NCBI GenBank assembly: GCA_002269645.1
Contig: NIVC01001823.1
Location: 169,783-233,782 of the forward strand
Direction of reading: 5' to 3'
Origin: Macrostomum lignano
Taxonomy: Eukaryota
Length of the DNA stretch: 64,000 nt
The notes below the pieces were generated by a model. It was not told where the DNA came from, ran no database searches, and saw only the letters and a list, made by a program, of their open reading frames with translations. Shown piece after piece: positions 5,392-47,930 of the stretch (the stretch's first letter is position 1; each line of letters begins with the position of its first letter). The position numbers and the translations under genes were made by a program.

Positions 5392-5520
5392 CAGATTTCA
5401 CAAGACCTAAATTTCACAAGACCTGAATTTCACAAGACCTAAATTTCACAAGCCCTAAATTTCACAAGACCTAAATTTCACAAGACCTAAATTTTACAAG
5501 ACCTAAATTTCACAACGCCT
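5392..5520. repeat. 16-bp minisatellite (acaagacctaaatttc), about 7-8 copies
   Basis: Direct inspection. Confidence 0.9.
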
Positions 5521-5809
5521 AAAAACACTATAGAGATAAAATCTTTCTTCTACAATCCTTCTGTATCTCCATAGTGTTTTTATGGTGACTCGCGACGGGG
5601 GGTCCTTCATTTTTTGGTGCAATCGATTTCCCTCTATAAATGCAGACCCCCTTCATGGCTTGGCTCAGACAAGCGTTTCGGCGTCCTCCTCTATATCTTT
5701 CCGTTTCGTCCTGCTTGACTTTCTCTCTCGTCTTAGTTATTTGCTTCAAAGAGCTCGGCACCTCACCGAAGGCTGCAACTCTGCGGAGTTGGTGGCAGGG
5801 GGCGCTTTC

Positions 5810-25430: not shown

Positions 25431-26334
25431 GATCATAACGACAACGAGCACGCATGAGCTAAGCCACCAAGAATGGTTGTCCTCAAATTTTAATATCTTT
25501 AGATTAGAATCCTCATGGCTCATTCATTCCTTAGCATATTCCAGATTTCAGTACTGTGTCCGTTCACTTACTATGATAGACTGGGTTAATTTGTATTGGC
25601 CTGGCTTCTGGGGGGGGGGGTGCGTCATAGAGGAAAGCCGGAAAAACTTTCGCGTATATTATATACATAGATATACACATGCAGACTTTACCAGACAGGG
25701 TAAGGCAGGATAGGATGCTTAACAGCTAGTCTGTGTTAACCTGGCCTGGGTTACAGCGGCTCTGCAGGGGGTCATAATGCAATACGTACCAGTATTGCAG
25801 AGAGAGAGAATAAGTGTTTATTGCATGCAGCCTTACTTCACGTTTGGGCACTGCTTGTACTGCTTGAACTCTCTATCTCTCTCTCTCACCCCTCCCTCAC
25901 CCTCTGCAGCGTACTTTCGTCCCCATGCTTTTTTATCTAAATTTCTCTAACCCTGCATTTTATTATAATCTATATGGTCTCTATATATGGTGGTGGTGGT
26001 GTTGGGGTTAACTGTGCAGTGCAGTTCTGCGCCTGTCTCCCCCCTGGCTCCTCTTCCCTCGCGCTTGTGGGGGTTGGGGCTGCGGGTCTGGCCGCGGGTG
26101 CAAGCTGGGTACTTACTGGTTACTGAAAGAGCTTCATGGCTTGATTGTTCAGTTTTGCTTGCCCGTGAGGTTTACGCTGGCTGCGAGTTTTTTCAAGTGG
26201 CCAAGGACTGCTGCAGAAGCTGGAGTCTGGAGTGGAAAAGGATAGCGCTTGTGTAATTGTACTTGGAATGGGTTTTGTTGAAATTGTTAATATTTGTACT
26301 CATTGTGGCCTTCAGTGAACCTCGGTGAAATGAT

Positions 26335-29830: not shown

Positions 29831-30383
29831 CAGCTGCCGTAAAGGGCGCTAAATCAGCTGGGCAAAAATGTGCCCATAAAATTCACCAGCCTAGTGAATG
29901 GGGGGGGGCAGCGGCCCCGGCGAGCCACATCATTAGCTCGAACAAGAGAGAACCTGATCAACACTGCACACTCGCACAGCAAATATGTGCGATGTCGCCA
30001 GTTTGCAGTTGTAAAATTATTAATTACCTTTTGCTTGCCCTAACATGTACATTGGGGGGGGGTTAAACCTGTTTAATCTGTGTTTTTCGATCTTTTATAC
30101 TGTAGGTAACAGCCGCCTCGCTGTGCTGCAGCATCAGTTCAACAGCACTTTGGATACCAGCAGCAGCAGCAGCAGTCAGCAGCGAATACACCATGCATGC
30201 AGAGCCTGCGCCCTATAAAAGATTTCATAATGCCTCCCTGCCTTGCTTTTCATTCTGACTGTTTACATGCATTTTACGGTCATGGTGAATATTTTTCTTG
30301 CTTTTTTCTTGTAATAGTTTCGTTAGTCTACTTGTAGTAGAAAGGCAGGTATTTTGCATCAAAATCTACCATGTCCCCAGGAA

Positions 30384-31510
<1,127 letters not shown>

Positions 31511-31621
31511 GATCCCTTCATTCCAGATGAAATGAAAATAGAAGTTCAGAAAAGCAGTGGATTTTATTCAATAGGATTCAACACAAGCTGAGCGCACAGT
31601 CGCAGGTTAAGCAAGGCTCAT

Positions 31622-31949
31622 TTAGCCCAGCAAGCCAGTCAGCATCTCAATGTAGGCCTGCGCCATCAGCAGAGTCTCAAATTTGCTCAGCCGTCTGCCG
31701 TGACCGCCGCAGCCTCCGAGCAGCGCTGCCGCCTCATCACCCTCAGCGGCCGGAATCGCCGCTCTGAGCTGGTCGAACGCCGCGTTCAAAGCGTTCATCC
31801 GACGTCGCTCCCGATCGTTGGCGGCGTGGCGTCGACGGACTCGGTCTGGTTGCTGCTGTCGCTGCTTCGAGCAGCTCGTCTGCTTCTTTGTGGCCGGTCG
31901 GCTGCTTGACTCGTGGTTGATTGCAGAGGTGAGCGAGACAGGTGGCTGC
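31622..31949 (-). CDS. atonal: Atonal-family bHLH transcription factor, exon 2 (bHLH domain)
   Basis: [29 protein letters not shown]...[21 protein letters not shown] matches atonal/Atoh1/7 (AANARERRRM..LN.AFD.LR..IP...LSK.ETLQMAQ.YI). Acceptor ctctcagcag|G. Symbol is family-level only. Confidence 0.9.
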
Positions 31950-31989
31950 CTGCTGAGAGCATGAGAAGACGGATGTTTAAAGGATTCGC

Positions 31990-32940
31990 GTCTCCGCAAT
32001 GATTCCCCCTCCCAATCGGTAGGAAAATTCCCTCGCCTCCGCAATGGTTTCGGCCCCAACGGCAGAAAAGTTCCCTGTCTCCGCAATGATTCCCCCTCTC
32101 AATCGGTAGGAAAATTCCCTCGCCTCCGCAATGATTCCCCCTCTCAAACGGTAAGAAAATTCCCTCACCTCCGCAATGATTCCCCCTCTCAATCGGTAGG
32201 AAAATTCCCTCGCCTCCGCAATGATTCCCCCTCCCAATCAGTAGGAAAATTCCCTCGCCTCCACAATGATACCCCTCAATCAGTAGGAAAATTCCCTCGC
32301 CTCCACAATGATTCCCCTCAATCAGTAGGAAAATTCCCTCGCCTCCACAATGATTCCCCTCAATCAGTAGGAAAATTCCCTCGCCTCCACAATGATTCCC
32401 CTCAATCGGTAGGAAAATTCCCTTGCTTCCACAATGATTCCCCCACAACGGTAGGAAAATTCCCTCGCCTCCGCAATGGTTTCGGCCCCAACGGCAGAAA
32501 AGTTCCCTGTCTCCGCAATGATTCCCCCTCTCAATCGGTAGGAAAATTCCCTCGCCTCCGCAATGATTCCCCCTCTCAATCGGTAAGAAAATTCCCTCGC
32601 CTCCGCAATGATTCCCCCTCTCAATTGGTAGGAAAATTCCCTCGCCTCCGCAATGATTCCCCCTCTCAATCGGTAGGAAAATTCCCTCGCCTCCGCAATG
32701 ATTCCCCCTCCCAATCAGTAGGAAAATTCCCTCGCCTCCACAATGATTCCCCCTCCCAATCAGTAGGAAAATTTCCTCGCCTCCACAATGATACCCCTCA
32801 ATCAGTAGGAAAATTCCCTCGCCTCCACAATGATTCCCCTCAATCGGTAGGAAAATTCCCTTGCCTCCACAATGATACCCCCAATCGGTAGGAAAATTCC
32901 CTTGCCTCCACAATGATTCCCCCACAACGGTAGGAAAATT
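31990..32940. repeat. About 43-45-bp minisatellite (ccgcaatgattccccctctcaatcggtaggaaaattccctcgcct) filling the bHLH intron
   Basis: Direct inspection. Confidence 0.97.
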
Positions 32941-32985
32941 CCCGAAAAGTCTCACAGATACATTGAAGGTCATTGCAAATCTCAC

Positions 32986-33182
32986 CTGGAGAAATCCAGC
33001 GGCTCAGAAGTCAGAGTCAAATTCGCAGAATTCCCCTGGCATTCGGGTTTGGCCGTCAGACTTGGCTGCCACTGCAGGCTCTTTGGCGATGCCGCGAAAT
33101 TACCAAAACTGGCTTCAGGACAATGAGCTTGAGCATTGCAGCAACTTGGACAACTGCTGCCCACTTTCAAATCGCTCTGCAT
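32986..33182 (-). CDS. atonal: Atonal-family bHLH, predicted exon 1 (spliced CDS 525 nt = 174 aa)
   Basis: ATG at 33182. Donor CCAG|GTGAGA at 32986/32985 is phase 2 and splices in frame to 31949. Confidence 0.7.
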
Positions 33183-36100
33183 TTCTGCTACTGTCGTGTG
33201 TCAATTGACTTTTAAAAGTGAGAGCTGAATTAATCTCGGGAACAAGGGCCGGACTGATGGGGTCCAGCATCCTTATAATTTATGATATATATATTTCTGG
33301 GGGATGTCGCGTGCTTGACCTCCCGATCGCGTGAAAGCCATTCGCGCAAAACTTCGCAATCTCGTCAATTCGAGGCTGAGAGTTACGTATAACTATTGCC
33401 CAATCCGATGGGAGTCGCAGCTCCGCCCCCCTCGATGGGGATGACGCATGACATTGAGGAGTGTCTGCTCCTAGAGACCTCTGCACCGTTTACGCGCTGT
33501 AATTAGCGTCCAATCAGTTATCAAATATTAAGGGGATTGCTAGAGACAGGTTGGGAGCTACCGCTGTCAGTGTTAAGACTGTTGACGATTCGAGAATTAG
33601 TCTGGAGTAGGGAATGGGGCATGCCAGCTTTCGCACGCAAACTGCAATTCGCTTCGAGCATTTAATCATGTCATTCATTTGCTGGGGCCGTCAGAGTCTA
33701 CAGACTCCCTAGAGCAGGGGTCGGGGCGAACTCCTGAGTCTGCTCAAGGTTTGTGTCTTCTCAACTCTCTTCTCCCCTCTTTCCTCTTCTCTCCTCTTCC
33801 CCCTATCTCTCCCCTCTCCTCTTATCTACGCTCGTATTTTCTCATTCACTCATTATATTCTCGCATCCTCTTCTCTTCTATTCTCTCTCATTTCCTATTC
33901 CCTATCGTATTCACTCTGGATTCTTTAATTATCTGACCCTTAAAGTAAAACAATTCCGACCCCTGCCCTTAAGAGCCACACATGCACACGTAGTAAGGAA
34001 CTGTTCTTACAGTAGCTAGATTTAGCATTCAGTATTTGCTGTTTCGCAGTAGCTATATGCGGCACATCCTACATGTAGTTCAACTTTTTCTCATTTTTTC
34101 TTTCATTTCGGCCAACTAATTCTTTGGGATAGAGAGAAGTTTGGGACAAGACACCAGCTGTACACATTGTGTATACGGGGCCAAGTTTAAACTTATTTAA
34201 GGCACCGAATCCAACTGCTAAAACATGTAGATTTAATATGCATGTACAGATTCGATACAGTAATCACAAATGCATGTGTTTCTATGAGCGCTATACATAT
34301 TGTGATATATGCGACTGCCTCATATACTATGCAATTTAGTGACTATCTATTAAATATTGATTATTTTACCGAACTTATTTTCGCGAAAATATTAACATTG
34401 ATTATTACTGTACATAAAGCTGAATTGCTAGCTATATTTTAATTTTTGAAAATAAAAATTATATATAAAACTTATAAAGTACATATATATATCTATTTGC
34501 ATAGAATCAGTTTTGTTATAATGACGCATTGTTTTCTTCACAAATTTAACCGGCTATTTTTAATTTATTTTTAGCAAATTATCCAATCCCAGAATACAGA
34601 GTACAGATAAGGTTAAATTTTAGATGCTTAATACGCTCGTAGATTAATTAAATTTTATAACATGAAAATAGTTTTATTTCAATTTTTTATTACGCTTCCA
34701 CTGAAAAGTGACACAAGTGTTGTCCTGGAGAAGTTATTTTGATACATTGTCAACCTCAGTTTTGAGTTTTGTAGGCCTGCCTATTGAATTGTACCATGCA
34801 TTAGCCTATGCCATAGGCTTGAATTATCTATGGCTATCTTGTTTGCATGTTGCTATGTGGGACTGTGGGTTAGGCTTAAATAAAAAAGTTAGATTTAAAA
34901 TTTCATCAAACTCTAGGCCCTATAGGCTATACTAATTAGATTTAGACTTATATTTGATGCAACATTGCTATTTTTGAGTCTTAATTCTTAAGTTGAGGTG
35001 CCAAACAAAATTTGGCCAAGAATAGGGCCTAAACATGATCAGATCAGCAAAAACAATGTTTCCAAAAATCAATATCATAGAAGCTTTAACATTAGGCCCT
35101 AAAACAATCTAATCCATTAAGACAATTTTCATAGACCATTTTTTCTTATGTATGGTTTCAAAGCACTTGTTCAATGTGTAAGCCTTATAACTTTTTATGT
35201 TGAAAATGTATAGGCCTAGCTAGGGCCAGATGAGCCAAAGACCAAAGCTCAAAATATACAATGGAAGTGCCTCAATGAACCTATTGAAGGCTAGTATGGT
35301 ACCATCAATGAAGAAGTGGATAGGCACCATCTTCTGGGTTCAGCAAGGGGTGATGCTAATCAAGTGGCTGTCAGAGAAGTGGATAGTCACAGGAGACTCC
35401 TACATTGCCATATTATGCTAGCTAAAAGAAGCAATCAAGGAGAAAAGACAAGGAAAGGTCACCAGGGGCATCCAGTTGTTCTATGACAATATATATATGC
35501 CCAACCCCAAAATTTCACCCATCTGGTGCAAGTGCAACTTAGTTTTGTCTAGATTTGTGACTTAGTTTCTCCCAATTGCAACTTAGTTCTTCCCAATTGC
35601 AACTTAGTTCCCCTAATTGCGACTTAATTTTTATATTGTATAGGCCTATGACTTTTTTTGCCTTTTTCTCTTTTCTTTTCTTTTTTTCTTTCATTTTTCC
35701 TCTCTTTTCTCCTTCCTTTCTTTTCCTTTTCTCTTCTCCTTTCTTTTCCTAATTTTTCATTTATTACATTTTCAATTTTGCAACTTAGGCCAATGGCCAT
35801 TTTACCCATCTAGTTTGGATAGGTTGGATGGGTGTTAGCATATACGAGTATGTGACAACACTTTGGCGCATACCTGTCACAAGGCGCAGGCTGCCATCTA
35901 CAAGCTAGGGTTTAAGCAGCTCCCTCACCCTGCTCATTTACCAAACCTAGCTCTATCAGACTTTTGGCTATTCTTAGTTCTAAAAAACTCACTTTAAGGC
36001 CACCATTAGGCTTCTATGACTGTATTAGCATCCTTGGTAAACCAGTGATGCAAAAACCAGGGTAAAGACTAGTACACTATGGGCATTTAGAAGCTACCAA

Positions 36101-37201
36101 AGTGCTAGGCCAAGTGTGTGTGTCACTGCATGGGAACTTTGTTGAGAAAGTATAAAATGATTAACAGTTAATCATTGTTTGTTTTGTTTCTAGGCCTAGT
36201 TAAGAAAGTAACAGGACTTTTTGATTTGCCCTCATATTCTACCCTAGGCCAAGGTGGAATTTTTGTTATTGAAAAAGTCAAGTTTATTTTTGTTAAAAGT
36301 GTATTAAACTTGTTTCATATAGTTATAGGCTATTTTTAGGTCTATAAACATACCAAGTTAAATGTTTTTTGGCATTTTCACAATATTGAATTGAAGTCAG
36401 AATTCTAAGATCCCAAATTCCTATGATTTAATAATTTTCTATCATGTCTAGAGATTAACCTATTGGTTTCCTAGGATCATAAAACCCTAGGATTTTGGGA
36501 TCTCTAGTATTGTGTAGCATTATAGAAAATTAGCTTTTATTATAGGATGGCTTCTTTAATCATTTTATTTTGTCATTATTGTTTCTATTTTGGCATATTT
36601 TAGTCTATTTCTTCATTTTCAAACTTATATATCACATCTTTTTTATTAGCTGGTGAAATTGAAAATGTATCATAAATTTTGCTATATAAAAATATTCATC
36701 TATATATCTAATATATCCTATTTTTCAGCATATAAAAAATTTGTAGGTACCTAAAATAAAGGAAGAAATTTCAATGTAATGATATATTGAATTAAAAAGA
36801 AAAATGATGGATTTTTATATTCAAGAAATAGTTCTATTTTTAGCCAAAAATCTTATATATATATGTAACTAAATCTTAATTATTAATAGTTCAGATATAA
36901 TCTTTTAGGTAGGTTTTGAATTAGATAGAGTGAATTAAATCATTATTATTTATAAACTGATTTAGTTCTATGAAAAGCTATTTCTTAGAAATTATAAGAC
37001 ACAATGACATAAGTTATAAAAGCAGCTTCAGTTTTGTGAGTCCTAATTATTATATATGGTTTTGCTATTATTTTTTAACTTCTATAGTATTTTTATTGGC
37101 ATTTCGATTATATAAAAATTTAATTTAATTATTAATTGAAATTAAGTGTATAATTAGTAATGAATTTATTCACCCCAACCCACCTGCTCTTCAGCTCCAA
37201 C

Positions 37202-37732
37202 ATGCACTGCATCGGCTCCAAGCTGCCATCTGTTGTCCGTCTGTGCCAGCGGCTCTGCATCCAACCGCTCAGCGGTGCGGCTCAGGCTCCTCAGCCAATT
37301 GTAAAGGCTGTCCTGCCCGACCTGCCCTACGACTACAGCGCCCTGGAGCCGGTCATCAGCGCCGATATCATGCGTCTGCACCACCAGAAGCACCACGCCA
37401 CCTATGTGAACAATTTCAACTCCGCCCAGGAGACTCTGGCCGCCGCTCTGGCTGCTGGCAAAGCTTCCGACATCATTGCCGTCCAGGCGGCTCTGCGATT
37501 CAATGGCGGCGGTCACGTGAACCACAGCATCTTCTGGAAGAACCTCAGCCCTCAGGGCGGTGGCGAGCCATCCCGGTTCCTTTTGGAGGCGGTCAATCGC
37601 GATTTCGGCTCGTTCAGCAAGTTCCAGGAGCAGATGTCAGCCGCCGCCGTGGGTGTTCAGGGTAGCGGGTGGGCCTGGCTGGGCTATAACTTCAAGACTG
37701 ACCGGCTGCAGATTGCCACCTGCGCTAACCAG
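37202..37732 (+). CDS. SOD2: Mitochondrial manganese superoxide dismutase, exon 1
   Basis: Transit-peptide-like N-terminus, then [38 protein letters not shown] and [10 protein letters not shown]. Donor CAG|GTCAGT. Confidence 0.97.
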
Positions 37733-37864
37733 GTCAGTGTCTACTTTTATAGCTGACCTTTGATATTTCTGAGTAGCTATTGACCCATGTGAGTAGCTAT
37801 TGACCCATCAGTTTGAGATGGGTTCATCTTAGCATGTCTTGATTCATGACCTGAGCAATCATGA

Positions 37865-37985
37865 CAGCACCAGAGCCAGTCCTGACCCACCTGTCAGCAC
37901 CAGAGCCAGTCCTGACCCACCTGTCAGCACCAGAGCCAGTCCTGACCCACCTATCAGCACCAGAGCCAGTTCTGACCCACCTGTA
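37865..37985. repeat. 30-bp minisatellite x4 (cagcaccagagccagtcctgacccacctgt) in the SOD2 intron
   Basis: Direct inspection. Confidence 0.93.
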
Positions 37986-38006
37986 CTCATTGAAATTGCA
38001 TTCCAG

Positions 38007-38192
38007 GACCCGCTAAAGGCCACCACAGGCCTGGAGCCGCTGCTGGGCATAGATGTGTGGGAGCACGCCTACTACCTGCAGTACAAGAACGTTCGCCCAG
38101 ACTACGTCAAGAGCATCTGGAAGGTGATCAACTGGGACGACGTGGAGAATCGCCTGGACCAGGCCAAGAGTGGCGGAGTTAAGCTGGCTTGA
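38007..38192 (+). CDS. SOD2: MnSOD exon 2 (spliced 717 nt = 238 aa)
   Basis: Acceptor ttccag|GAC. Contains the DVWEHAYY metal-ligand signature. TGA at 38190-38192. Confidence 0.97.
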
Positions 38193-38654
38193 ATTTCTTA
38201 GCGAATGCTAACAAATTAATATTAACTTATTTTTTGTGAATTCAGCTTTGTTCATCTTCTGTCTGCTTGTTTCATAACATTTTTTGGGTAGTTTGTTAAT
38301 CATCATAAATTATAACTTTTAATTTTAGCACAGAAACGACAAATGTAATTTATTTATTATTACTGCAAGTAGTAAGTTGTGGTTTTTTCAAATCATATTT
38401 CCTAGTAAGGACAGTTAGCGATTCTCATATTAAAATAATGTCATGCCAGTTAGTTTCACTGTCGTTAAACTTCCTCGTTAAGTCGTTACTAAGATGGGCT
38501 TAAAAATTTAAAGTTTGTTTATCTTATAATATATTCTGTAGTTTATTAAGTTTACCACTAACGTGACCCGGTTAAAATACATCCTTTTGAGCCTCGATGC
38601 TGCTCATTTTTGATTACTGATTGCTGAGTCTGCTTATTTATTTATCGATTTTAT

Positions 38655-38701
38655 GACAGACAGACAGACAGGCAGACAGACAGACAGACAGACAGACACT
38701 A

Positions 38702-38746
<45 letters not shown>

Positions 38747-38921
38747 CTAAGACAGACAGACAGACAGACAGACAGGCAGACAGACTGACAGACAGACAGA
38801 CAGACAGACAGACACTAAGACAGACAGACAGACAGACAGGCAGACAGACTGACAGACAGACAGACACTAAGACAGACAGACAGACACTAAGACAGACAGA
38901 CAAGCAAACAGACAGACAGGC

Positions 38922-38958
<37 letters not shown>

Positions 38959-38973
38959 CTACGACAGACACTA

Positions 38974-39044
<71 letters not shown>

Positions 39045-39115
39045 TAGCCAGTCAGACAAACGGACGGACAGACAGACAGGCAGACGCAGATAAACAGGCA
39101 GATAGACAGACAGAC
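38655..39115. repeat. (GACA)n microsatellite with gacactaa interruptions
   Basis: Direct inspection. Confidence 0.97.
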
Positions 39116-39314
39116 GATAGTAAATTACATTCGCATAATCAAAATCACTTTCAAAATCAAGATACAAACTCTCACTTAAAGTCTGATTAAATAGTTACCA
39201 ATTTCTCCACTAAATTTCCAGCTAACAGCTTGCTAAACCGGAGCCGCTCCTGTTCCTGAAGCAGCACACCAACTAGTCCATAGTAATAAAGATCTACAAA
39301 GACTACACACTAGC

Positions 39315-39328
39315 GTTTCCATGGAGAC
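39315..39328. promoter_or_regulatory. X-box-like match GTTTCCATGGAGAC centred on the MARVEL-gene ATG
   Basis: Its reverse complement GTCTCCATGGAAAC fits GTHNYYATRRNAAC. Confidence 0.3.
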
Positions 39329-39614
39329 CGACGCCTACAAAGCAACCACTACCGAGACCACAGCCACCCATTCCGAGGGACCCGGTGTCGGGCTGGACAA
39401 AGACTTTGTCCGAACCCCCCTCGGCATCGTGCTGATTGCGGCTTTCGTCTCGGCCGTGATTTTATTCATCTGCGGCACCGTCTTCCCCTGGTCCATTCAC
39501 GGCGGCGGCTTTGTTGCTTTTGTTGGCACCACCGCCGCTTTCGGCACCGGCATTCTGTTTGTCCTGTACCTGATCCGCCTGCTGCCCAAGATTCCCGGCC
39601 CCTTCGGGCTGGTG
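39321..39614 (+). CDS. MARVEL-domain 4-TM protein (CMTM/plasmolipin/MAL-like), exon 1
   Basis: LDKDFVRTPLGIVL resembles the MARVEL N-terminal motif and is followed by hydrophobic helices. Donor GTG|GTGAGT. Confidence 0.85.
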
Positions 39615-39629
39615 GTGAGTCACCCCCAG

Positions 39630-40205
39630 CTTGTCTGTAGCTTACTGTGCCTGTCTGTAGCTTACTGTACCTGTCTGTAGATTACTGTACCTGTCTGTAG
39701 CTTACTGTACTTGTCTGTAGCTTACTGTTCCTGTCTGTAGCTTACTGTACTTGTCTGTAGCTTACTGTACCTGTCTGTAGATTACTGTACCTGTCTGTAG
39801 CTTACTGTACCTGTCTGTAGCTTACTGTACCTGTCTGTAGCTTACTGTGCCTGTCTGTAGCTTACTGTATCTGTCTGTAGCTTACTGTGCCTGTCTGTAG
39901 CTTACTGTACCTGTCTGTAGATTACTGTACCTGTCTGTAGCTTACTGTGCCTGTCTGTAGCTTACTGTACCTGTCTGTAGATTACTGTACCTGTCTGTAG
40001 ATTACAGTACCTGTTTGTAGCTTACTGTATCTGTTTGTAGCTTACTGTACCTGTCTGTAGCTTACTGTACCTGTCTGTAGCTTACAGTACCTGTCTGTAG
40101 ATTACAGTACCTGTCTGTAGATTACTGTACCTGTCTGTAGCTTACTGTACCTGTCTGTAGCTTACTGTACCTGTCTGTAGATTACTGTACCTGTCCGTAG
40201 CTTAC
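39630..40205. repeat. 20-bp minisatellite (cttactgtacctgtctgtag) starting just after the exon-1 donor
   Basis: Direct inspection. Confidence 0.97.
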
Positions 40206-40656
40206 CTCCACACTGGAAAAAACCGGCAGGGGACCCATAGGAGCCAGAAGGGTTTTAGGGGCTAACCCCTATAATATTTCAGTAGCACCTGTACTATTTT
40301 TGTACTACAGTGCAGTAAGTGCAGTAAAACACTGGTGACTCAATGTCTCGATAAATAAAAAAACAATATATATATATCAGAATGGTAATTAATTATAAGC
40401 CAATAAGCCAAATAGCAGTACAAAACTAAATTGTTATTCTTGCTACTTAATTGCGGCTACGCTAATCAGAAAATGGCACTGCATGATTACGAAACAGCTA
40501 GTACAAACAATGTACCTGGATTGTTCCTGGAAACTTATGGCTGCTTTTACATGTACAAGCGTCTGTCTAAATTCGCTTTTTTCGTCCTAAATCCTGACGT
40601 CTAGAGCATAGATAAGGTGACGAAATATCAAGCACTCTTGCCGTGATGGGGTTTGC

Positions 40657-40737
40657 GATCGTGATGACGCTTGCGATCGTGATGACACTTGCGATCGTGA
40701 TGACACTTGCGATCGTGATCGTATTCGCGATCGTGAT
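40657..40737. repeat. 18-bp repeat x4 (gatcgtgatgacacttgc) next to the LINE 3' tail
   Basis: Direct inspection. Confidence 0.85.
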
Positions 40738-42257
40738 GGTGTTGTTTTTTACTCTCGCCGGGGTCAAGCTGGACGGACAGCAACAGGAACTTAGCGACTT
40801 CAATGGGGTTGCGCCACTGATCCGAAGGCTCCAGCTCGGTGGGGTGAGCCGGTCAGTTAAAGAGATGCAGGCTGTCATGCAAGGCCGCGCCACACTCAGG
40901 GCAGCTGGGAGGCGTCTCAGGGTTCAGCCGGTGCTGGTAGATGCGAAGCAAGGGGCTGAAACCTGAGCGCAGCTGGGCGAGCAGGCAGAATGTACGGCGC
41001 GGCAGAGAGCGTTCAGACTCGCAGATATCAGGGCGGAGACCAACGACGCGGTTAGGAGGTAGGCTGTCGATATAATCCAGTACGATGTGCGAATTTTGTG
41101 CTCGTCTCGCCCTGTCCCAGGCTGCCGCGTCGTCGATGACCGCCGGGGCGGTGACTGGCTGCCAGGAATCATCAAAGAACGGTGCTGTAAAGATGGACGG
41201 CTTCATGCGCCGGCGAGGAGCCGGGCAGGCGGAGAGATGATGACAGGGGTGCTCAGGGCAGCGGGAGGCCAGAAGGAACTGGAGAGAGGAGCCTGTTGTG
41301 CTGCTGGACCGGGAGCATCCGAGTCTCGCAGTGGAGGTCGGCCACGGCACCGCTGACGGTGCAGCCCGTGACGCACCGAATGGCCGCGTTTTGGACCGCC
41401 TGGAGCCCGGTCCAGGAGGAGGACGAGATAGTAGGTCCCCAAACAGGAGCATCGTAGTTGAGGATGCTGCGTGAAATCGCCCTAAAGGTGTTGAGAAGCA
41501 GCTCCTTGCAGCAACCCCAACCGCTGCCCGCCAAGCAACGGAGGACGCTATTACGCTTGCGGGCCTTCTGGGTCGTCGCGTTGACGTGGCGGCAAAACGT
41601 CATTTTCGGGTCAAAGATGACTCCCAGGATTTTAGGATAGAGGGCCTGGGGTAGTCTGAAGCCGTCAAAGTTGACCTCGAGGGCCCTGGCGTATTCCCGT
41701 TGGTGCCGAGATTTTACTACATTTTACTGCCGAGACCTTGAGCTTGCAGGCGTCGAGAAACGGCGCCAGACGCGCCAGGTAGACGTTAAGTTGCTCCTGG
41801 ATGCGCGAGATGGAAGCGGAAGACGCAGCCACAGTCAGGTCGTCGGCGTATCCGATAAGGCTTGAGTCAGGGTCGTCCGGCATAGGGGTGTCCTTCAGGT
41901 AGAAAGCGAAGAGAAGCGGGTTGATCGCGCTGCCATAGGGGGACTCCCATACGGACTTGGCGCCAGGCGGACTTGCAGTCGCGCAGCACGGTGCGGGCGT
42001 GACGACCAAGAAGGTAGTTGGAGAGTTGCAGGTTCGGCAGGTCGGAGTTAAAGATGTCGGTAATGAGCTCGTAGTGATCCACACAATCGATAGCGGCTTT
42101 CAAGTCGAGGGCAACTGTGCCTGTTCTCGCCGGGTGTTTAGCATGGCAGAAACCAGTGCTGATCTGCTCAACGAGCTGGCACAGGGCAGTGGTGGTCGAG
42201 CGCATCGGGCGAATGCCGTGCTGCCAGGCTGGGAGTTTCAGGTTATCTGTCAGCAGG
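40738..42257 (-). mobile_element. 5'-truncated, frameshifted non-LTR retrotransposon (I/Jockey-group-like LINE): RT, post-RT domain, C-terminal CxxC..H motif and aaaaacaac tail
   Basis: Peptides QHGIRPMRSTTTAL, VALDLKAAIDCVDH, GSAINPLLFAFYL, GYADDLTV, LAGSGWGCCKELLLNTFRAISRSILNYDAPVW, LQAVQNAAIRCVTG and CPECGAALHDSLHLFN are spread over several frames. Confidence 0.92.
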
Positions 42258-42287
42258 GGTTTCCCGTGTTGAGTCAAATTAAGCCGC

Positions 42288-42327
<40 letters not shown>
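42258..42327 (-). rRNA. 70-nt fragment of the universally conserved 18S rRNA core (orphan fragment, not a gene)
   Basis: Minus strand reads TAAAGGAATTGACGGAAGGGCACCACCAGGAGTGGAGCCTGCGGCTTAATTTGACTCAACACGGGAAACC, matching the canonical eukaryotic SSU sequence as I recall it. Flanks are not rRNA. Confidence 0.95.
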
Positions 42328-43520
42328 TTTGTTTCCACTAGGCTCATATAATGATCCTAAACCTTGCCTAGCGTAGCTCTAGTGTCAAAAAAGGGGTGGC
42401 ACTAGGCATATGGGCCTTAAATCCGAAAGGCCTTACAAACACGGCTTGAACCTCGGAGTGCTGAGATTTGTAATGTTTTTCCGACCTTGACTGGATCAAG
42501 TCCGAGTCCTTTCACTTTATTGAGAGTCGTGGTTAGAACCGTGTCCAAGGCACCGCACCGACAGCGATTCCAACGACTTTAACGCCGCCAGAGATGTTCA
42601 AAAGCTCGGCGACTTGACCCCTCAGACCTTCATATTTAGCCTCTTTAAACCGTTCCTTTGATTGTAGCACATTCTCATTCGATTCATAGGGTACAGTGAC
42701 GTCTATGATCGCTCCATCGTTGCCCTTCCTGAAAATCAGGTCGGGCTTAAAGTTCTCTAGATCTTTACGAACGAGCCGTTCTCTCCAAACTTCCCAACCA
42801 TTGTCCACCAGGGCTTTGCCAAGATAGCTCGTAATCCGCAATAAAATTGTGCCGGCGGCATTGGGCTAGTCTGGTAAACGGGCATTCATTCAAAACATGC
42901 TCAGTTTCTACCGCGTTTCCACAGCGACGGCATTTCAGAGTCTCAAAGTCTTGGGTGGATGAATTGGCGCGTCTCAACAGTTCTTGTAACCAACTTGTTG
43001 ATAGACACGTATTCACCCGCCTTCACTACACCGTCTTCGCCATGTAGCCAATAAGGTCTAACCGCGCTTTCCCACCGTACGCTCATGAGCTTCCCTCTGG
43101 GTGCTCAAATAGGCCTGCTCATATTTATCCTGTATAACCTTTTTTTGCGGATTTAACGTAAAGTCCACGAGTGAGACTACTTTCATAAGTTGGAATTTTT
43201 TCACTTATGTTGGCTACAACTGGGTCCGAAGAGCTCGCCATGCTTTCGCAGGCAGCACGCCGCATCAGCGGAATCGTGAGCTCAAAATCAGGTAGCCCGA
43301 GGCTTCTGTACTTCGAGAAGTACAGAGAAATCGGGTCCTCGCGGGGGAGAGCAGCAATTCTGGCCACTTGCTCCAGTCTCGGCACCAGTCCAGTTACTTA
43401 TACGAGTGCTAAAACTCAAGATAGCTTCTTACGATGATGCGGTGGATCCTTTAGCACAGCCAGAAGTTCTTCGACTTCCAACTCTGAGGCAGCTTGGTGG
43501 AAAAGGCATTCGTTCATCCT
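42328..43520 (-). mobile_element. 5'-truncated R2-clade (RLE-type) non-LTR retrotransposon: thumb region, CCHC knuckle, PD-(D/E)xK endonuclease and about 200 nt of 3' UTR; 3' junction is into 18S sequence (R8-like)
   Basis: Peptides LPREDPISLYFSKYRSLGLP..SSDPVV, KCRRCGNAVETEHVLNECPFTRLAQCRRHN and KPDLIFRKGNDGAIIDVTVPYE...KEAKY. Left boundary is sharp; right boundary is approximate. Confidence 0.88.
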
Positions 43521-45556
43521 CCGTCATCTCTTTCAGTTTATACAGATTTCACAAAATGACCCAGTTCTGACGATAAATAAGAGCACTCAAAACATAGCTT
43601 TACTCAATTGAGTAAGGCCCAATGCCGAAGCGACAAACCATTGCGTTGATTCATGGTTGCTCATATTCGATATTTGACTGATATATTCAAGAGGATGGAC
43701 AACAGACAAAAACATCCTACATGTAGATTATGAAGATAATCGGAAAATCTCTGTTCAAACAATTTATGAAAATTGGGGAAATTATCTAAAGAATTTTACA
43801 ACTTTGTAAATGTAACATTCAATAAAGCAAATGACCCATAAAGTTATTAATTTGGACTTCAATAAGACACAAATTACCTAAATTTTAGCAGCTATCGAGT
43901 CAATAATATTTTTTCCTAAGTATGTGAAAGCAAAGGAAAAAACAGTTCAGTTGGAAAACAAACCTAATTTCTGACCAAAGAAGCGACCATCTGGACCAGT
44001 AAGAGTCCAGATGCAAAAATCCTGTAAATTGTTGTCAATGATCAAAAAGCAAGTGACTAACCAAAAGAGCGGAAGTGAATTCAATGTACGAGCCGTACTC
44101 TATGTTTTCAGCATATTATCTGACAAGTGAAGAACAAAAAATGTAAGAATGTAAGAAATGTAAATGTAAAAATGTAGGCTGAAGGAACAAAAATGTAATA
44201 CACTAAATTTGTGAGCAGTGCTCACAAACATGAATCGCTAAAAATGATTAGATGCCAATGGAAACAAAACGAACTCAGACTCAACCTTCCCTTTAGGAGC
44301 ACCAGAAATCCATGATCGCGACACAGCATAATAACCAATAGAAAGATTTCCTGACGGGTAGGGATGCATTGACAAATCACGGCGAAATATCAAATCTTCC
44401 CCAGAAACTGAGTTGGAAGTGACTATTTACAACTGCACAACTTTACAATTAACAAGGCTTGAGAGAGAACTTAAAAAGAACGCATCACCATCAACTGATT
44501 ACTGACATGTTTTAAAATACCTCTTTCTGTCGGACACCTCGTGTTCTTAAGAACACCAAGATGGTTTTCAAACTGAAAAGCAAATAAATGAATCAAATGA
44601 GCCGTATAACCTAACAAACCCATGCAAATGCAACAATAAATGACAATTGTAGCTTAATGAATGTACACCAAACAACAATGACAAAATTGGAACCAAAATT
44701 TTCGAGAGATCGATGTGCACATTCATACGAATACCAATCACTGAACCTCGAAGAAGTAAATACATAAAATGCATAGTGTAGCTTGAGGAAGTGTAGATAA
44801 AAACAGAAATTTCAATCAGAGGCGACATGACTCACTGATTATCTTCACGATATGCTCGGTAAAATTAATCAGTGCGACTATCATGTACATGCAGTAGTTG
44901 GAAAAATCATTGCGATCCTAAATTCGAGTGGTTGTACAACGACAATATGAGCATTCTTTGGCTGCTGTATGACCAAGAACACCTTTAACAATAAGCACGA
45001 GCATGTGTATCACCAATGAGTCGCATTCTAACAACTTTGACATTACACCCAGAAATGTTCAAGCCAACGTAACAGCTTGACTTCCCCGACAAGTTTACGC
45101 AGAAACAACTGCAGATTGGCCCTTCACTTGGCCTTTATACAATGTTAAAGTGAATCACGTGAATGGAAAAGAAGTGCCTTCAATCAAATGACACTAAAAT
45201 TGGCCACAGGACTCAAGTCAGGAGCACTTCGAAAAGCGGCAGACGACCAAAATTTACTTCACAAGAGATAACAAATTGTTTATTTGTGGGATAGGTTAAT
45301 TAATTGATGTTCATAACAAAACTCAATGTTGTTCTTGAGTGAAATGTAAGCATAAGTTCCTGAACCAATGATAAAATTGGTTCCATACGAACGTCTCCTT
45401 AGTGTAAGATAAATGATAAAAAAATAATTAGAATCACGCACAAATGTAATTTTATCCCAAATGGCACTATTATTCTGACGCTTAAAAAACCCTGCTTGCG
45501 CACATACCAATAACCAATCTGATAATCTGCACACTCTCTTAATCCGACCCATTCAG

Positions 45557-45658
45557 ATCCTGATCTACCTGGCCGTGGTGGTCATTCTGAGCCTGATTGC
45601 TTTCATCCTATCGGCCGTGAACGGAAAGGGCATTGGCGGCGCCGCCATCGCCAGCGCT
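45557..45658 (+). CDS. MARVEL protein exon 2 (ILIYLAVVVILSLIAFILSAVNGKGIGGAAIASA)
   Basis: Acceptor attcag|ATC and donor GCT|GTGAGT, both phase 0. Encodes a TM helix. Not in the ORF track. Confidence 0.8.
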
Positions 45659-45719
45659 GTGAGTTTTTTGAAATAACTTCTGGCTAATTTTCAGAATTCT
45701 CCCTTACTGGGAATTCCCT

Positions 45720-46090
45720 ATTGCTGTAAAAAAATCCACAGGGGAACCCTTATGGGAATCCCTTTGAAAAACTCCTAATGGAAATCCCGATAAGAAACTC
45801 CAAATGGAAATCCCTTTGTGAAGCTCCTGTGGGAAATCCCAATGAAAAAACTCCTGTGGGAAATCCCAATGAAAAACTCCCATGGGAAATCCCTCTGAGA
45901 AACTCCCCTGGGAAATCCCTATGAGAAATCCCTATGATAAACTCCCCTGGGAAATTCCTATGATAACTCCCTGGGAAATTCCTTTGAGAAACTCCCCTGG
46001 GAAATCCCTATGATAAATTCCCCTGGGAAATCCCTATGAGAAATTTCCAATGGGAAATCCCGATGAAAAATTCCGTGGAAAATCCCTGAG
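45720..46090. repeat. Degenerate about 30-bp repeat built on gggaaatccc, in MARVEL intron 2
   Basis: Direct inspection. Confidence 0.85.
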
Positions 46091-46158
46091 CAATTTCAAT
46101 ATTTCGCACTAGCATAGGCTTCAAGTCAGCGAGAATCTCTGATGCCTCATTATCCCAG

Positions 46159-46344
46159 GTGTTCGCCGTTCCCACGCTTGGCCTACACGGCTACTTTGGC
46201 TTCCTGATGTTCCGCAAGTACCAGGTGCTGAAAAATCATTTCCACAAAGGCGAGTGCGGCCACAGCTACTCGGTCACCACCACCCAGCAGAATTACGAGG
46301 CCTCTCACCCCGAGGACGCCGCGCCGGCCTACGGCAACTACTGA
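46159..46344 (+). CDS. MARVEL protein exon 3 (spliced 582 nt = 193 aa)
   Basis: Acceptor tcccag|GTG. Encodes the last TM helix and cytoplasmic tail. TGA at 46342-46344. Confidence 0.8.
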   Translation: MFAVPTLGLHGYFGFLMFRKYQVLKNHFHKGECGHSYSVTTTQQNYEASHPEDAAPAYGNY

Positions 46345-46669: not shown

Positions 46670-47930
46670 TAGGTTGCTAGGACCGCTAAGTCGGTTGCTA
46701 TGGACACTGATTCAGTTTCAAAGGGCTGGAATGGTTGATATGGATGCCAATTCAGTTGCTAGGGTTTGCTAAATCGGTTGCTATGGCTGCCAATTCAGTT
46801 GCTAGGGTTTGCTAAATCGGTTGCTATGGATGTCAGTCAATTCAGTTGCTCGGATTTGCTAAATCGGTTGCTATGGATGCCAATTCAGTTGCTAGGGTTT
46901 GCTAAATCGGTTGCTATGGCTGCCAATTCAGTTGCTAGGGTTTGCTAAATCGGTTGCTATGGCTGCCAATTCAGTTGCTAGGGTTTGCTAAATCGGTTGC
47001 TATGGATGCCAATTCAGTTGCTAGGGTTTGCTAAATCGGTTGCTATGGCTGCCAATTCAGTTGCTAGGGTTTGCTAAATCGGTTGCTATGGATGTCAGTC
47101 AATTCAGTTGCTCGGATTTGCTAAATCGGTTGCTATGGATGCCAATTCAGTTGCTAGGGTTTGCTAAATCGGTTGCTATGGCTGCCAATTCAGTTGCTAG
47201 GGTTTGCTAAATCGGTTGCTATGGATGCCAATTCAGTTGCTAGGGTTTGCTAAATCGGTTGCTATGGCTGCCAATTCAGTTGCTAGGGTTTGCTAAATCG
47301 GTTGCTATGGATGTCAGTCAATTCAGTTGCTCGGATTTGCTAAATCGGTTGCTATGGATGCCAATTCAGTTGCTAGGGTTTGCTAAATCGGTTGCTATGG
47401 ATGCCAATTCAGTTGCTAGGGTTTGCTAAATCGGTTGCTATGGCTGCCAATTCAGTTGCTAGGGTTTGCTAAATCGGTTGCTATGGATGTCAGTCAATTC
47501 AGTTGCTCGGATTTGCTAAATCGGTTGCTATGGCTGCCAATTCAGTTGCTAGGGTTTGCTAAATCGGTTGCTATGGCTGCCAATTCAGTTGCTAGGGTTT
47601 GCTAAATCGGTTGCTATGGATGTCAGTCAATTTAGTTGCTCGGATTTGCTAAATCGGTTGCTATGGATGCCAATTCAGTTGCTAGGGTTTGCTAAATCGG
47701 TTGCTATGGATGCCAATTCAGTTGCTAGGGTTTGCTAAATCGGTTGCTATGGATGCCAATTCAGTTGCTAGGGTTTGCTAAATCGGTTGCTATGGATGTC
47801 AATTCAGTATTTAGGGTCGCTGATTCGGTGGCTATGAACACCAATTAAGTTGCTAGGGACGCCTAATCGGTTGCTATGAATACCAATTCAGTTGCTAGGG
47901 TTGCTGAGTCGGCTGCTATGAACGCCTTAT
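46670..47930. repeat. 43/47-bp minisatellite (gttgctatggatgccaattcagttgctagggtttgctaaatcg) with higher-order periodicity
   Basis: Direct inspection. Near-identical 60-aa ORFs recur through the array. Confidence 0.97.

What the first reader, a model, noticed from the sequence alone, without database searches (positions are those of the whole stretch)
40738..43520. Three-part retro-chimera (R2-like 3' end + 70 nt 18S + 5'-truncated LINE) in a protein-coding intron: probable RT template switch
Seen: all three parts are co-oriented on the minus strand and abut without spacer. The 18S sequence does not resume beyond the LINE tail at 40738, so this is not a LINE inserted into an rDNA orphon. Known: R2-type RNAs derive from rRNA co-transcripts and can carry downstream rRNA at their 3' end, and LINE RTs form chimeras by template switching (U6/L1-type). 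Inference: the LINE RT copied about 1.5 kb of its own RNA, then jumped to an element-18S read-through RNA, moving a site-specific element out of rDNA.
Basis: partly seen in the sequence, partly recalled or inferred. Interest (0 to 1): 0.78.

Follow-up and report, generated by a model that had tools for sequence, protein, structure and literature searches.

The report
rDNA fragment nested inside a LINE
The apparent three-part fusion is an old LINE copy in a flatworm intron that was later interrupted by a piece of an 18S rRNA gene already carrying an R2-type retrotransposon, and a 640-bp deletion in this copy hides that layout, so this is ordinary nested junk DNA with one instructive junction.

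Summary
The three parts are real, co-oriented and abutting: an R2-clade C-terminus with 3'UTR, 69 nt of 18S, and a LINE RT with a 3' tail.

The window is Macrostomum lignano (Mlig_3_7, NIVC01001823.1). Two paralogous loci, with 1-2% substitutions, carry the same insert plus 640 bp that the window has lost. That extra DNA shows the following:
- The R2-like piece is also preceded by 59 nt of 18S.
- The same LINE continues upstream of that 18S.
- LINE codons run colinearly across the insert.
- A LINE direct repeat, CCTGCTG (7/7; 11/12 over 12 nt), flanks the insert.

The layout is therefore LINE5' | 18S | 5'-truncated R2-like | 18S | LINE3' + tail.

Three rDNA units in the same genome carry a full-length relative with an intact 1156-aa ORF at exactly this 18S site, so the family is R8-like and 18S-specific.

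The best reading is that a roughly 1.45-kb piece of an element-interrupted 18S gene, probably as RNA, was inserted into a LINE copy with a target-site duplication. The locus was later triplicated, and this copy then suffered the deletion.

A single template switch is excluded. A double switch with return is possible but less parsimonious. Interest is modest.

The parts
43582..43588 (-). Candidate outer target-site duplication, 5' copy (GAGTGCT)
   Evidence: This 7-mer equals the 7 nt directly after the LINE tail. About 3% of random 38-mers from the window have a prefix of 7 nt or more that occurs in this 340-nt zone. It is identical in all three paralogues. Support is moderate only.
43307..43581 (-). 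5' segment of the 5'-truncated LINE (region before RT motif 0).
   Evidence: In L001 and L003 this sequence runs on without a break into LINE RT motifs 0-1 (tblastn P0001 aa 93-153, P0005 aa 171-214). By eye the frame reads ...FSKDNLIQAIKRSKPSKA.GLDGI.... The exact 5' end (43581 to ~43566) rests only on the candidate TSD.
43303..43306 (-). Junction of a window-specific 640-bp deletion (GAAG is either filler or a mutated GCGG)
   Evidence: L001 and L003 both carry about 640 bp here that the window lacks. That DNA holds LINE RT motifs 0-1, 59 nt of upstream 18S, and the first ~320 bp of the R2-like fragment.
42335..43302 (-). R2-clade (R8-like, 18S-specific) element: the remaining part of a 5'-truncated copy, with thumb/linker, CCHC, RLE and 3'UTR. 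It has several frameshifts.
   Evidence: PDB phmmer to R2 proteins gives E=1.4e-17. The RLE ORF is 86% identical to the intact 1156-aa M. lignano protein P0153. The DNA is 85-87% identical to the rDNA-resident element in L004.
42327..42334 (-). A-rich 3' tail of the R2-like element plus T (AAACAAAT)
   Evidence: The junction architecture matches the rDNA copies, which read ...CCTAGTGG(A)9T|AAAGGAATTG in L005 and L006.
42258..42326 (-). 18S rRNA gene fragment: the native downstream flank of the element's insertion site
   Evidence: Rfam SSU_rRNA_eukarya model 1146-~1214, 69 bits, E=4e-19. It is identical to the M. lignano 18S in L006 up to GGGAAA. There are 0 substitutions among the three paralogues.
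42251..42257 (-). Inner direct repeat, downstream copy (CCTGCTG): LINE sequence duplicated at the insertion of the rDNA piece
   Evidence: The upstream copy survives in L001 and L003 as ...GAAAAACTCCTGCTG|GGCAGCC (18S). The downstream side reads GGGAAACCCCTGCTG|ACAGAT. The match is 7/7, or 11/12 over 12 nt.
40739..42257 (-). 3' segment of the LINE (RT motif 2a to the C-terminal CCHC), with frameshifts and an in-frame TGA
   Evidence: Pfam RVT_1. tblastn of P0001 aa 148-636. Joined to the upstream LINE segment of L001, it gives one open frame colinear with relatives.
40638..40738 (-). LINE 3' tail of 18-bp tandem repeats (CATCACGATCGCAAGYGT)n
   Evidence: TRF period 18, 4.8 copies. Copy number differs among paralogues: L001 is about 107 nt longer and L003 about 89 nt longer.
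40631..40637 (-). Candidate outer target-site duplication, 3' copy (GAGTGCT)
39240..46344 (+). Host MARVEL-domain gene (NCBI gene model). The insert lies antisense in its first large intron.
   Evidence: L002 is 100% identical to window 27187-48192, with a gene model at L002 12054-19158 and a weak PF01284 hit. Exon-like ORFs lie at 39321-39620 and 45479-45673.

Best explanation
Shown.
- The locus holds a 5'-truncated APE-type LINE, about 2.3 kb plus an 18-bp-repeat tail. It lies antisense in an intron of a MARVEL gene of Macrostomum lignano.
- The RT coding region of this LINE is interrupted between motifs 1 and 2a by a roughly 1.45-kb piece of an rRNA gene.
- That piece consists of 59 nt of 18S, a 5'-truncated copy (last ~400 codons plus 3'UTR and A-rich tail) of an R2-clade element that normally lives at exactly this 18S site, and the next 69 nt of 18S.
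- The piece is flanked by a duplication of LINE sequence (CCTGCTG).
- The whole composite predates the triplication of this genome segment.
- In the window copy, a later 640-bp deletion removed the upstream LINE/18S/element junctions. This created the apparent three-part chimera.

Inferred.
- The rDNA piece entered as RNA. An rDNA unit carrying a 5'-truncated element, which therefore lacks the 5' processing signal, is transcribed as part of the pre-rRNA.
- Priming was helped by the short similarity between 18S (GGGAAAACTC) and the LINE (GAAAAACTC).
- cDNA synthesis ended 59 nt into the upstream 18S, and the staggered second cut produced the 7-bp (possibly 12-14-bp) duplication.

Open.
- The reverse transcriptase could be the R2-like protein, whose 3'UTR binding site is in the RNA, or an APE-type LINE protein acting in trans.
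- It is also unresolved whether the insertion happened at this locus or in a source LINE that was then copied here.
For: Structure.
- The paralogous loci L001 and L003 (1-2% substitutions from the window) carry the same outer and inner junctions plus 640 bp that the window lacks.
- The extra DNA holds LINE RT motifs 0-1 (tblastn P0001 aa 93-153, directly preceding aa 148-643 of the downstream LINE part).
- It also holds upstream 18S (Rfam SSU model 1071-~1141, E=7.5e-6). This is contiguous in 18S with the downstream fragment, which starts at model 1146.
- Removing the insert and one repeat copy gives an open LINE frame...LAKIFEKLLLTDDLKLPAWQHGFRPMRSTTTAL..., colinear with four relatives.
- The inner direct repeat is CCTGCTG 7/7, or AAAC[T/C]CCTGCTG 11/12. 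My estimate of the chance expectation at fixed junctions is about 6e-5.

The element is a resident of 18S.
- L004, L005 and L006 are three rDNA units on three contigs. Each reads 18S-5' | element | 18S-3' | 5.8S | 28S.
- The junctions are identical across these units.
- P0153 and P0213 are intact 1156-aa ORFs that match R2 proteins at E~1e-90.
- A distant relative in another organism (L007) sits at the same 18S site.

RNA origin.
- The element's native A-rich 3' junction is retained.
- The 5'-truncation junction has AGCTG microhomology, which is typical of rDNA copies.
- 18S and the LINE are similar (AAAACTC) at the 3' breakpoint.
- R2-family reverse transcriptases are known to start at RNA 3' ends without target homology and to make 5'-truncated copies. 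This is established knowledge, and Hydra R8 makes a 9-bp TSD (PMC6895275).
Against: - No empty site was available, so the order of events (LINE first, rDNA piece second) rests on nesting logic and the inner repeat alone.
- The observed 3' junction (GGGAAACCCCTG) is not the simple crossover product of the 18S seen in three rDNA units (GGGAAAACTC) and the LINE (AAAAACTCCTG). It needs two extra changes, or a donor 18S variant (GGGAAACC) that I did not observe.
- At its native 18S site the M. lignano element shows a small target deletion and no duplication. A 7-bp duplication is therefore not its usual signature and fits an APE-type enzyme or a DNA-repair route equally well.
- The outer TSD has only moderate support (p~0.03).
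- The fragment is 14% diverged from the three rDNA-resident copies, so its donor lineage was not observed.
Confidence: 0.6

Rival explanations
1. Double template switch during the LINE's own retrotransposition. The RT copied the LINE RNA from its tail to motif 2a. It switched at the AAAACTC similarity onto an 18S/element/18S transcript and copied 1.45 kb. It then jumped back to the same LINE RNA 7-14 nt downstream of where it left and finished the 5' part.
For: All parts are co-oriented. A 7-nt similarity between 18S and the LINE lies exactly at the 3' breakpoint. R2 and LINE reverse transcriptases are known to jump between templates (references listed in PMC7650587). A single candidate TSD brackets the whole composite.
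Against: It needs two switches, the second landing almost exactly at the point of departure with only 1-2 nt of complementarity (18S CCTCTCG|GGCAGCC versus LINE CTCCTGCTG). The duplicated CCTGCTG is what a staggered DNA cut gives without further assumptions. From memory, known LINE chimeras of the U6/L1 type do not return to the LINE.
Confidence: 0.15
2. DNA-level capture. A fragment of rDNA (chromosomal, extrachromosomal, or a free cDNA) was ligated into a staggered double-strand break in the LINE by end joining, and fill-in produced the short duplication.
For: 18S lies on both sides of the element, as in the genomic rDNA units. Microhomologies at the junctions are short. The element's own integration does not make duplications at its native site.
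Against: A 7-bp (or 12-14-bp) duplication is longer than usual fill-in products. The breakpoint at an 18S/LINE similarity and the 5' end inside 18S fit priming and premature termination of cDNA synthesis. No second rDNA-derived DNA piece was seen nearby.
Confidence: 0.15
3. Single template switch giving a three-part chimera (R2-like 3' end + 18S + 5'-truncated LINE).
For: It fits the window sequence taken alone.
Against: Both paralogues have upstream 18S and the continuation of the same LINE 5' of the R2-like piece. The window lacks them only because of a private 640-bp deletion.
Confidence: 0.02
4. Assembly chimera: rDNA reads mis-joined into a LINE.
For: rDNA and LINEs are repeats that assemblers mishandle.
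Against: Three separate contigs carry the same junctions together with locus-specific substitutions and indels. A gene model from a separate source (UniProt A0A1I8HEJ3, P0010) strings the LINE 3' part together with the same neighbouring genes, which implies the same placement.
Confidence: 0.01

Closest known systems
R8 (R8Hm-A/B of Hydra magnipapillata): the R2-superclade lineage that targets 18S rRNA genes
   Same: It is an R2-clade single-ORF element with RT, C-terminal CCHC and a restriction-like endonuclease. It is inserted in 18S at one fixed site in several rDNA units. Hydra R8 is placed inside the R2A clade (PMC5035012). P0153 matches R2Tg and related R2 chains better than the two 'Reverse transcriptase-like protein' entries 8gh6 and 8ibw, which I take from memory to be Bombyx R2. 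By eye, P0153 has three N-terminal zinc-finger-like motifs.
   Different: The host is a flatworm. At the native site there is no 9-bp duplication as reported for Hydra (PMC6895275), but an apparent loss of AAACT(T). I could not check whether the Hydra site is the same nucleotide position, because the original paper is not held. Sequence relatedness to R8Hm itself was not tested.
Nested transposable-element insertions (one element interrupted by a later insertion with its own target duplication)
   Same: The host LINE is colinear across the insert, and a short duplication of host-element sequence sits at both inner junctions.
   Different: The inserted unit is not a free element. It is a piece of an rRNA gene that carries one, with 59 and 69 nt of 18S on its two sides.
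LINE-mediated chimeric retrocopies made by template switching (U6/L1-type; from memory, Buzdin and colleagues)
   Same: Co-oriented fusion of an unrelated RNA-derived sequence to a LINE 3' part. The junction lies at a short similarity. A possible single outer TSD is present.
   Different: Here the LINE is present on both sides of the foreign piece with contiguous coordinates and an inner duplication. That class has the foreign RNA only at the 5' end.
rDNA insertion elements with rRNA flanks outside the rDNA arrays (R1/R2-type 'insertion-like' sequences in Drosophila heterochromatin; from memory) and non-site-specific R2 families of flatworms (R2NS-1_SMed, R2NS-1_CSi; PMC5035012)
   Same: R2-lineage sequence is found outside rDNA. 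In the Drosophila case it comes together with rRNA gene flanks.
   Different: This is a single small (1.45-kb), defective, TSD-flanked piece inside a LINE in a genic intron. It is neither a heterochromatic block nor an active dispersed family.

Membership tests
R2 superclade of non-LTR retrotransposons | Single ORF with RT followed by a CCHC motif and a PD-(D/E)XK restriction-like endonuclease | tested here: met
   The window fragment matches the C-terminus of R2/R2Tg chains at E=1.4e-17, with KPDLIF...IIDVTV...K motifs. The full-length relative P0153 (1156 aa) matches R2 proteins at E=2.8e-90 over RT and RLE, with RVT_1 at E=1e-33.
R2 superclade of non-LTR retrotransposons | N-terminal zinc finger(s) plus Myb DNA-binding region | tested here: inconclusive
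   P0153 shows three C2H2/CCHC-like motifs by eye. Pfam gave only a weak C2H2 hit. Myb was not tested. The window copy lacks this region because it is 5'-truncated.
R8-type (18S rDNA-specific R2 lineage) | Copies inserted at one fixed site of the 18S rRNA gene inside rDNA units | tested here: met
   L004, L005 and L006 each read 18S-5' | element | 18S-3' (from SSU model ~1117) | 5.8S | 28S. Their junctions are identical. The window and L001 fragment has the same two flanks.
R8-type (18S rDNA-specific R2 lineage) | 9-bp target-site duplication (reported for Hydra R8) | tested here: not met
   In L005 and L006 the upstream flank ends ...GCAAAGCTG and the downstream flank starts (T)AAAGG. AAACT(T) is missing and nothing is duplicated. 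In L007 the upstream flank runs to ...GAAACTT and the downstream flank reads (A)n T AAAGG.
R8-type (18S rDNA-specific R2 lineage) | Same nucleotide site as, and phylogenetic grouping with, R8Hm | not testable with these tools
   The original description is not held and no R8Hm sequence is available here.
Template-switch chimeric retrocopy (U6/L1-type) | The foreign sequence forms the 5' end, and the LINE part is 5'-truncated at the junction | tested here: not met
   The LINE continues upstream of the foreign piece in L001 and L003, with contiguous protein coordinates.
Template-switch chimeric retrocopy (U6/L1-type) | One TSD brackets the whole chimera, with none at the internal junction | tested here: not met
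   The outer 7-mer GAGTGCT is only moderately supported (p~0.03). The internal junctions carry their own 7-bp repeat.
Simple nested insertion | The host element is colinear across the insert, and host sequence is duplicated at both junctions | tested here: met
APE-type LINE (CR1/L2/Jockey-like group; clade not resolved) | RT domain with an upstream apurinic-like endonuclease, plus a C-terminal CCHC | tested here: inconclusive
   RVT_1 is present in the window copy. CPECG..H..H is seen by eye. The APE domain is absent here because of 5' truncation. It was found in one relative, P0006 (PF14529). No clade-level phylogeny was done.

The most novel reading that the evidence does not exclude
The insert may be a genomic record of ectopic target-primed reverse transcription of a read-through pre-rRNA/element transcript. 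On this reading, an RNA from an rDNA unit with a 5'-truncated R8-like element was primed at a nick in LINE DNA through a 7-nt similarity to 18S, 69 nt downstream of the element. It was then copied through the element into upstream 18S. That would show concretely how R2-superclade elements, together with pieces of rRNA genes, leave the rDNA. It would also show that their co-transcripts are usable templates away from the target site.
Probability: 0.4. Interest if true: 0.5.

Novelty: new member of a known kind. Interest (0 to 1): 0.3.

Why it matters
For the finding as posed, the main value is corrective. A striking 'retro-chimera' turns out to be a nested insertion plus a later deletion, and comparison with paralogues was enough to show it.

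Two modest points remain of interest to transposon specialists.

1. Macrostomum lignano carries a full-length, apparently intact R2-clade element at a fixed site in 18S rDNA. In the papers I could read, the only 18S-targeting R2 lineage reported is R8 of Hydra. A distant relative sits at the same 18S site in an unidentified organism.

2. A defective member of that family left the rDNA together with short 18S flanks on both sides and landed with a target duplication. This natural example bears on how site-specific elements and rDNA fragments get dispersed.

Nothing suggests a function for the host gene.

Tried and rejected
- A whole-window Rfam search at gathering threshold found nothing. The 18S pieces are detected only when short stretches are searched (one search missed the upstream piece).
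- blastn of the region against the window found no second copy of any part.
- The search for homologous proteins with a stitched R2-like translation found nothing. That query also wrongly included LINE sequence from 43400-43306.
- An exact look-up of the RLE ORF found no record.
- A 21-22-bp outer TSD (GAGTGCT..TCGTCA) was considered and rejected. Its 16/22 identity is incompatible with the near-perfect 18S flanks, and the extension is not significant on its own (p~0.05).
- The 8-nt 'duplication' CAAAGCTG at the element's 5' truncation point turned out to be element sequence homologous to GAACAGCTG of the full-length copy. It therefore reflects AGCTG microhomology and is not a target duplication.
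- The idea of a LINE inserted into an rDNA orphon was rejected, because 18S does not resume beyond either LINE end and the LINE is colinear across the rDNA piece.
- Metagenome scans for the inner junction and for the (A)nT/AAAGG junction found nothing. This is uninformative, since the host genome is probably not in that collection.
- The original R8 paper could not be read.
Full report
**1. What is in the window**

Read on the minus strand, the region contains three recognisable parts.

- A decayed reading frame ends in a CCHC motif and a KPDLIF...IIDVTV restriction-like endonuclease. By phmmer against PDB it matches the C-terminus of R2 retrotransposon proteins (9nl3, R2Tg 9dou; E=1.4e-17).
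- Next come a short 3'UTR and an A-rich stretch.
- Positions 42326-42258 match eukaryotic 18S rRNA (Rfam model 1146-~1214, 69 bits, E=4e-19 when searched alone). This match is not seen at gathering threshold in the whole window.
- From 42257 a LINE reverse transcriptase follows without spacer (RVT_1; 37-43% identity to RT/APE proteins). It has frameshifts, an in-frame TGA and a C-terminal CPECG..H..H motif.
Positions 40738-40638 are its tail of 18-bp tandem repeats.

**2. Where the window comes from**

- One LINE hit, P0010, is a UniProt gene model of Macrostomum lignano. It strings together the LINE C-terminus, antisense pieces of the neighbouring MARVEL and SOD2 genes, and the bHLH gene of this window.
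- The SOD2 gene of the window led to three M. lignano proteins (g1-g3) and their loci in assembly GCA_002269645.1.
- L002 is 100% identical to window 27187-48192. The window is therefore NIVC01001823.1.
- L001 and L003 are paralogous copies of the same region. They differ from the window by 1-2% substitutions.
- The NCBI gene model of a MARVEL-domain gene spans window 39240-46344 on the + strand. The insert is thus intronic and antisense.

**3. What the paralogues show**

- Both L001 and L003 carry the insert with the same junctions. Both also have about 640 bp that the window lacks at 43307/43302. Because two of three copies agree and the extra DNA is meaningful, the window has suffered a private deletion.
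- Read 5' to 3', the extra DNA first contains LINE RT motifs 0-1. tblastn places P0001 aa 93-153 there, directly preceding aa 148-643 of the downstream LINE part.
- It then contains 59 nt of 18S (Rfam model 1071-~1141, E=7.5e-6).
- It ends with the first ~320 bp of the R2-like fragment.
- The upstream 18S ends at ...GCAAAGCTG and the downstream 18S starts at AAAGGAATTG. These are the two sides of one site in 18S.
- The ancestral layout is therefore: LINE 5' part | 18S (59 nt) | 5'-truncated R2-like element (~1.31 kb) | 18S (69 nt) | LINE 3' part | tail.

**4. The LINE is one element, interrupted**

- The upstream LINE part ends ...GAAAAACTCCTGCTG. The downstream part begins, after GGGAAACC, with CCTGCTGACAGAT.
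- CCTGCTG is repeated 7/7. AAAC[T/C]CCTGCTG is repeated 11/12.
- Deleting the rDNA piece and one repeat copy gives an open frame...GPISFLSPLAKIFEKLLLTDDLKLPAWQHGFRPMRSTTTAL.... It aligns colinearly with four related LINE proteins across the junction.
- This is the signature of an insertion into a LINE with a short target duplication. It is not a LINE that was 5'-truncated at 42257.

**5. The R2-like element is a resident of 18S**

- A search of 1.84 billion representative proteins with the RLE ORF found P0153, at 86% identity and 1156 aa. It is an M. lignano protein (PAA49614.1) with two cluster mates.
- Their loci L004, L005 and L006 lie on three contigs. Each is an rDNA unit reading 18S-5' part, element, 18S-3' part (from model ~1117), 5.8S, 28S.
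- The junctions are ...GGTTGCAAAGCTG|GAAGCCTTCGGG... and ...GAGCCTAGTGG(A)9T|AAAGGAATTGACGG. The 3' architecture matches the window (GTGGAAACAAAT|AAAGG).
- P0153 matches R2 proteins at E~1e-90.
- A distant relative (P0155, 40% identity in the RLE) sits at the same 18S site in an unidentified organism. Its upstream flank ends ...GCTGAAACTT and its downstream flank reads (A)~85 T|AAAGG.
- In the literature I could read, the only 18S-targeting R2 lineage is R8 of Hydra (PMC5035012; PMC4838377). It is reported to make a 9-bp duplication (PMC6895275).
- The M. lignano copies show no duplication but an apparent loss of AAACT(T).
- I could not verify that the Hydra site is the same.

**6. The fragment itself**

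- It is 85-87% identical in DNA to the rDNA-resident copies.
- It starts at about codon 752 of 1156, at an AGCTG microhomology with the upstream 18S. This is typical of 5'-truncated copies formed inside rDNA.
- Some frameshifts are shared by all three paralogues, and others are private to one copy.
- The 18S flanks differ from M. lignano 18S at only about 1 of 128 positions in the inferred ancestral state.
- Hence the 14% difference in the element reflects a different element lineage and not great age.
- The 18S-down piece has no substitution among the paralogues, where about one would be expected. Its perfection is therefore not anomalous.

**7. Junction details and mechanism**

- M. lignano 18S reads CACGGGAAAACTCACCCGG in all three rDNA units. 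The LINE reads TTCGAAAAACTCCTGCTG. They share AAAACTC exactly where the 18S-down piece ends.
- My estimate of the chance of a 7-nt identity at a breakpoint, allowing a few nucleotides of slack, is about 1e-3. This suggests that annealing set the 3' junction.
- The observed junction (CACGGGAAACCCCTGCTG) is not the simple crossover product. It needs two extra changes, or a donor 18S variant GGGAAACC that I did not observe.
- The 5' junction (18S CCTCTCG|GGCAGCC versus LINE CTCCTGCTG|) has at most 1-2 nt of microhomology.
- The simplest account is target-primed reverse transcription at a staggered break in LINE DNA. The template would be a fragment of pre-rRNA from a unit carrying a 5'-truncated element, which for that reason lacks its 5' processing signal. 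Synthesis would begin at or near the AAAACUC similarity and stop 59 nt into the upstream 18S.
- Which enzyme did this is open. The R2-like protein is a candidate, since its 3'UTR binding site is in the RNA and it is known to start on RNA 3' ends without target homology. An APE-type LINE protein is the other candidate.
- Also open is whether this happened here or in a source LINE that was later copied into the intron.
- A candidate outer TSD (GAGTGCT at 43588-43582 and 40637-40631) has only moderate support (p~0.03).

**8. Rivals**

- A double template switch with return to the same LINE RNA would also give this layout and would use the AAAACTC similarity. It requires the second jump to land 7-14 nt from the point of departure with almost no complementarity. 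I give it about 0.15.
- Capture of an rDNA DNA fragment or free cDNA at a break is also possible, at about 0.15.
- An assembly artefact is excluded, because three contigs share the junctions while carrying their own substitutions and indels.

**9. Verdict**

The feature is a nested insertion of an rDNA piece (18S with a resident R8-like element) inside a LINE. It was triplicated with the genome and then partly deleted in this copy. It has no sign of function and is of a known kind. The modest interest lies in two things: the flatworm 18S-specific R2-clade element, and this concrete example of such an element leaving the rDNA together with rRNA flanks.

Noticed in passing
L004 4839-8309, L005 6001-9471, L006 ~3737-7409 (rDNA units of M. 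lignano): A full-length R2-clade element is inserted at one fixed site of 18S in three rDNA units. Two copies have an intact 1156-aa ORF (P0153, P0213). In the papers I could read, the only 18S-targeting R2 lineage is R8 of Hydra. The element's 3' end is ...CCTAGTGG(A)9-13(T) and there is no target duplication.
   Followed up: partly
L007 1-7352 (ENA ERZ18545484, contig ptg001001l): An unidentified organism carries a distantly related R2-clade element (P0155, 1039 aa, intact) at the same 18S site, with a ~85-nt poly(A) tail. Its upstream flank ends ...GCTGAAACTT and its downstream flank reads T AAAGG.
   Followed up: partly
L004 4577-4612: The 5' junction of this full-length copy has an extra 36 nt compared with L005 and L006. 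The extra stretch includes a second copy of 23 nt of upstream 18S (GGGGAAGTATGGTTGCAAAGCTG).
   Followed up: no
L005 1085-1247: A U1 snRNA gene (Rfam, 152 bits) lies about 3.4 kb upstream of the 18S gene in the same orientation, inside what should be the rDNA intergenic spacer.
   Followed up: no
window 31600-41400, minus strand (protein P0010, UniProt A0A1I8HEJ3): A public gene model named 'BHLH domain-containing protein' is a run-on artefact. It joins the LINE C-terminus, antisense translations of the MARVEL and SOD2 exons, and the real bHLH domain.
   Followed up: partly
window 40638-40738; L001 ~13850-14060; L003 ~13640-13830: The LINE tail of 18-bp repeats varies in copy number among the three paralogues: about 5 units in the window, and about 6 and 5 more in L001 and L003.
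   Followed up: partly
L001 ~15608-15610 and L003 ~15383-15385 (window equivalent 42295/42294): A 3-nt insertion (GAA) in the 18S-down fragment is shared by L001 and L003 but absent from the window. L001 and L003 also share many substitutions, which suggests they are the closer pair.
   Followed up: no
window 42833-42827 region versus L003 ~15910: A 7-nt stretch (TACGAGC) that breaks the R2-like frame is present in the window and L001 but absent from L003, where the frame matches P0153. This pattern is incongruent with L001 and L003 being the closer pair. It could be a microhomology deletion in L003 or gene conversion.
   Followed up: no
window 39632-40205, 38634-39167, 30298-31591, 23000-25500, 46670-47920: The window is very rich in micro- and minisatellites. 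A 20-bp unit occurs about 29 times in the same intron as the insert. There are long (ACAG/CTGT)n-type arrays, and a ~43-bp-period array at 46.7-47.9 kb. Composition skews are extreme at 23-25 kb.
   Followed up: no
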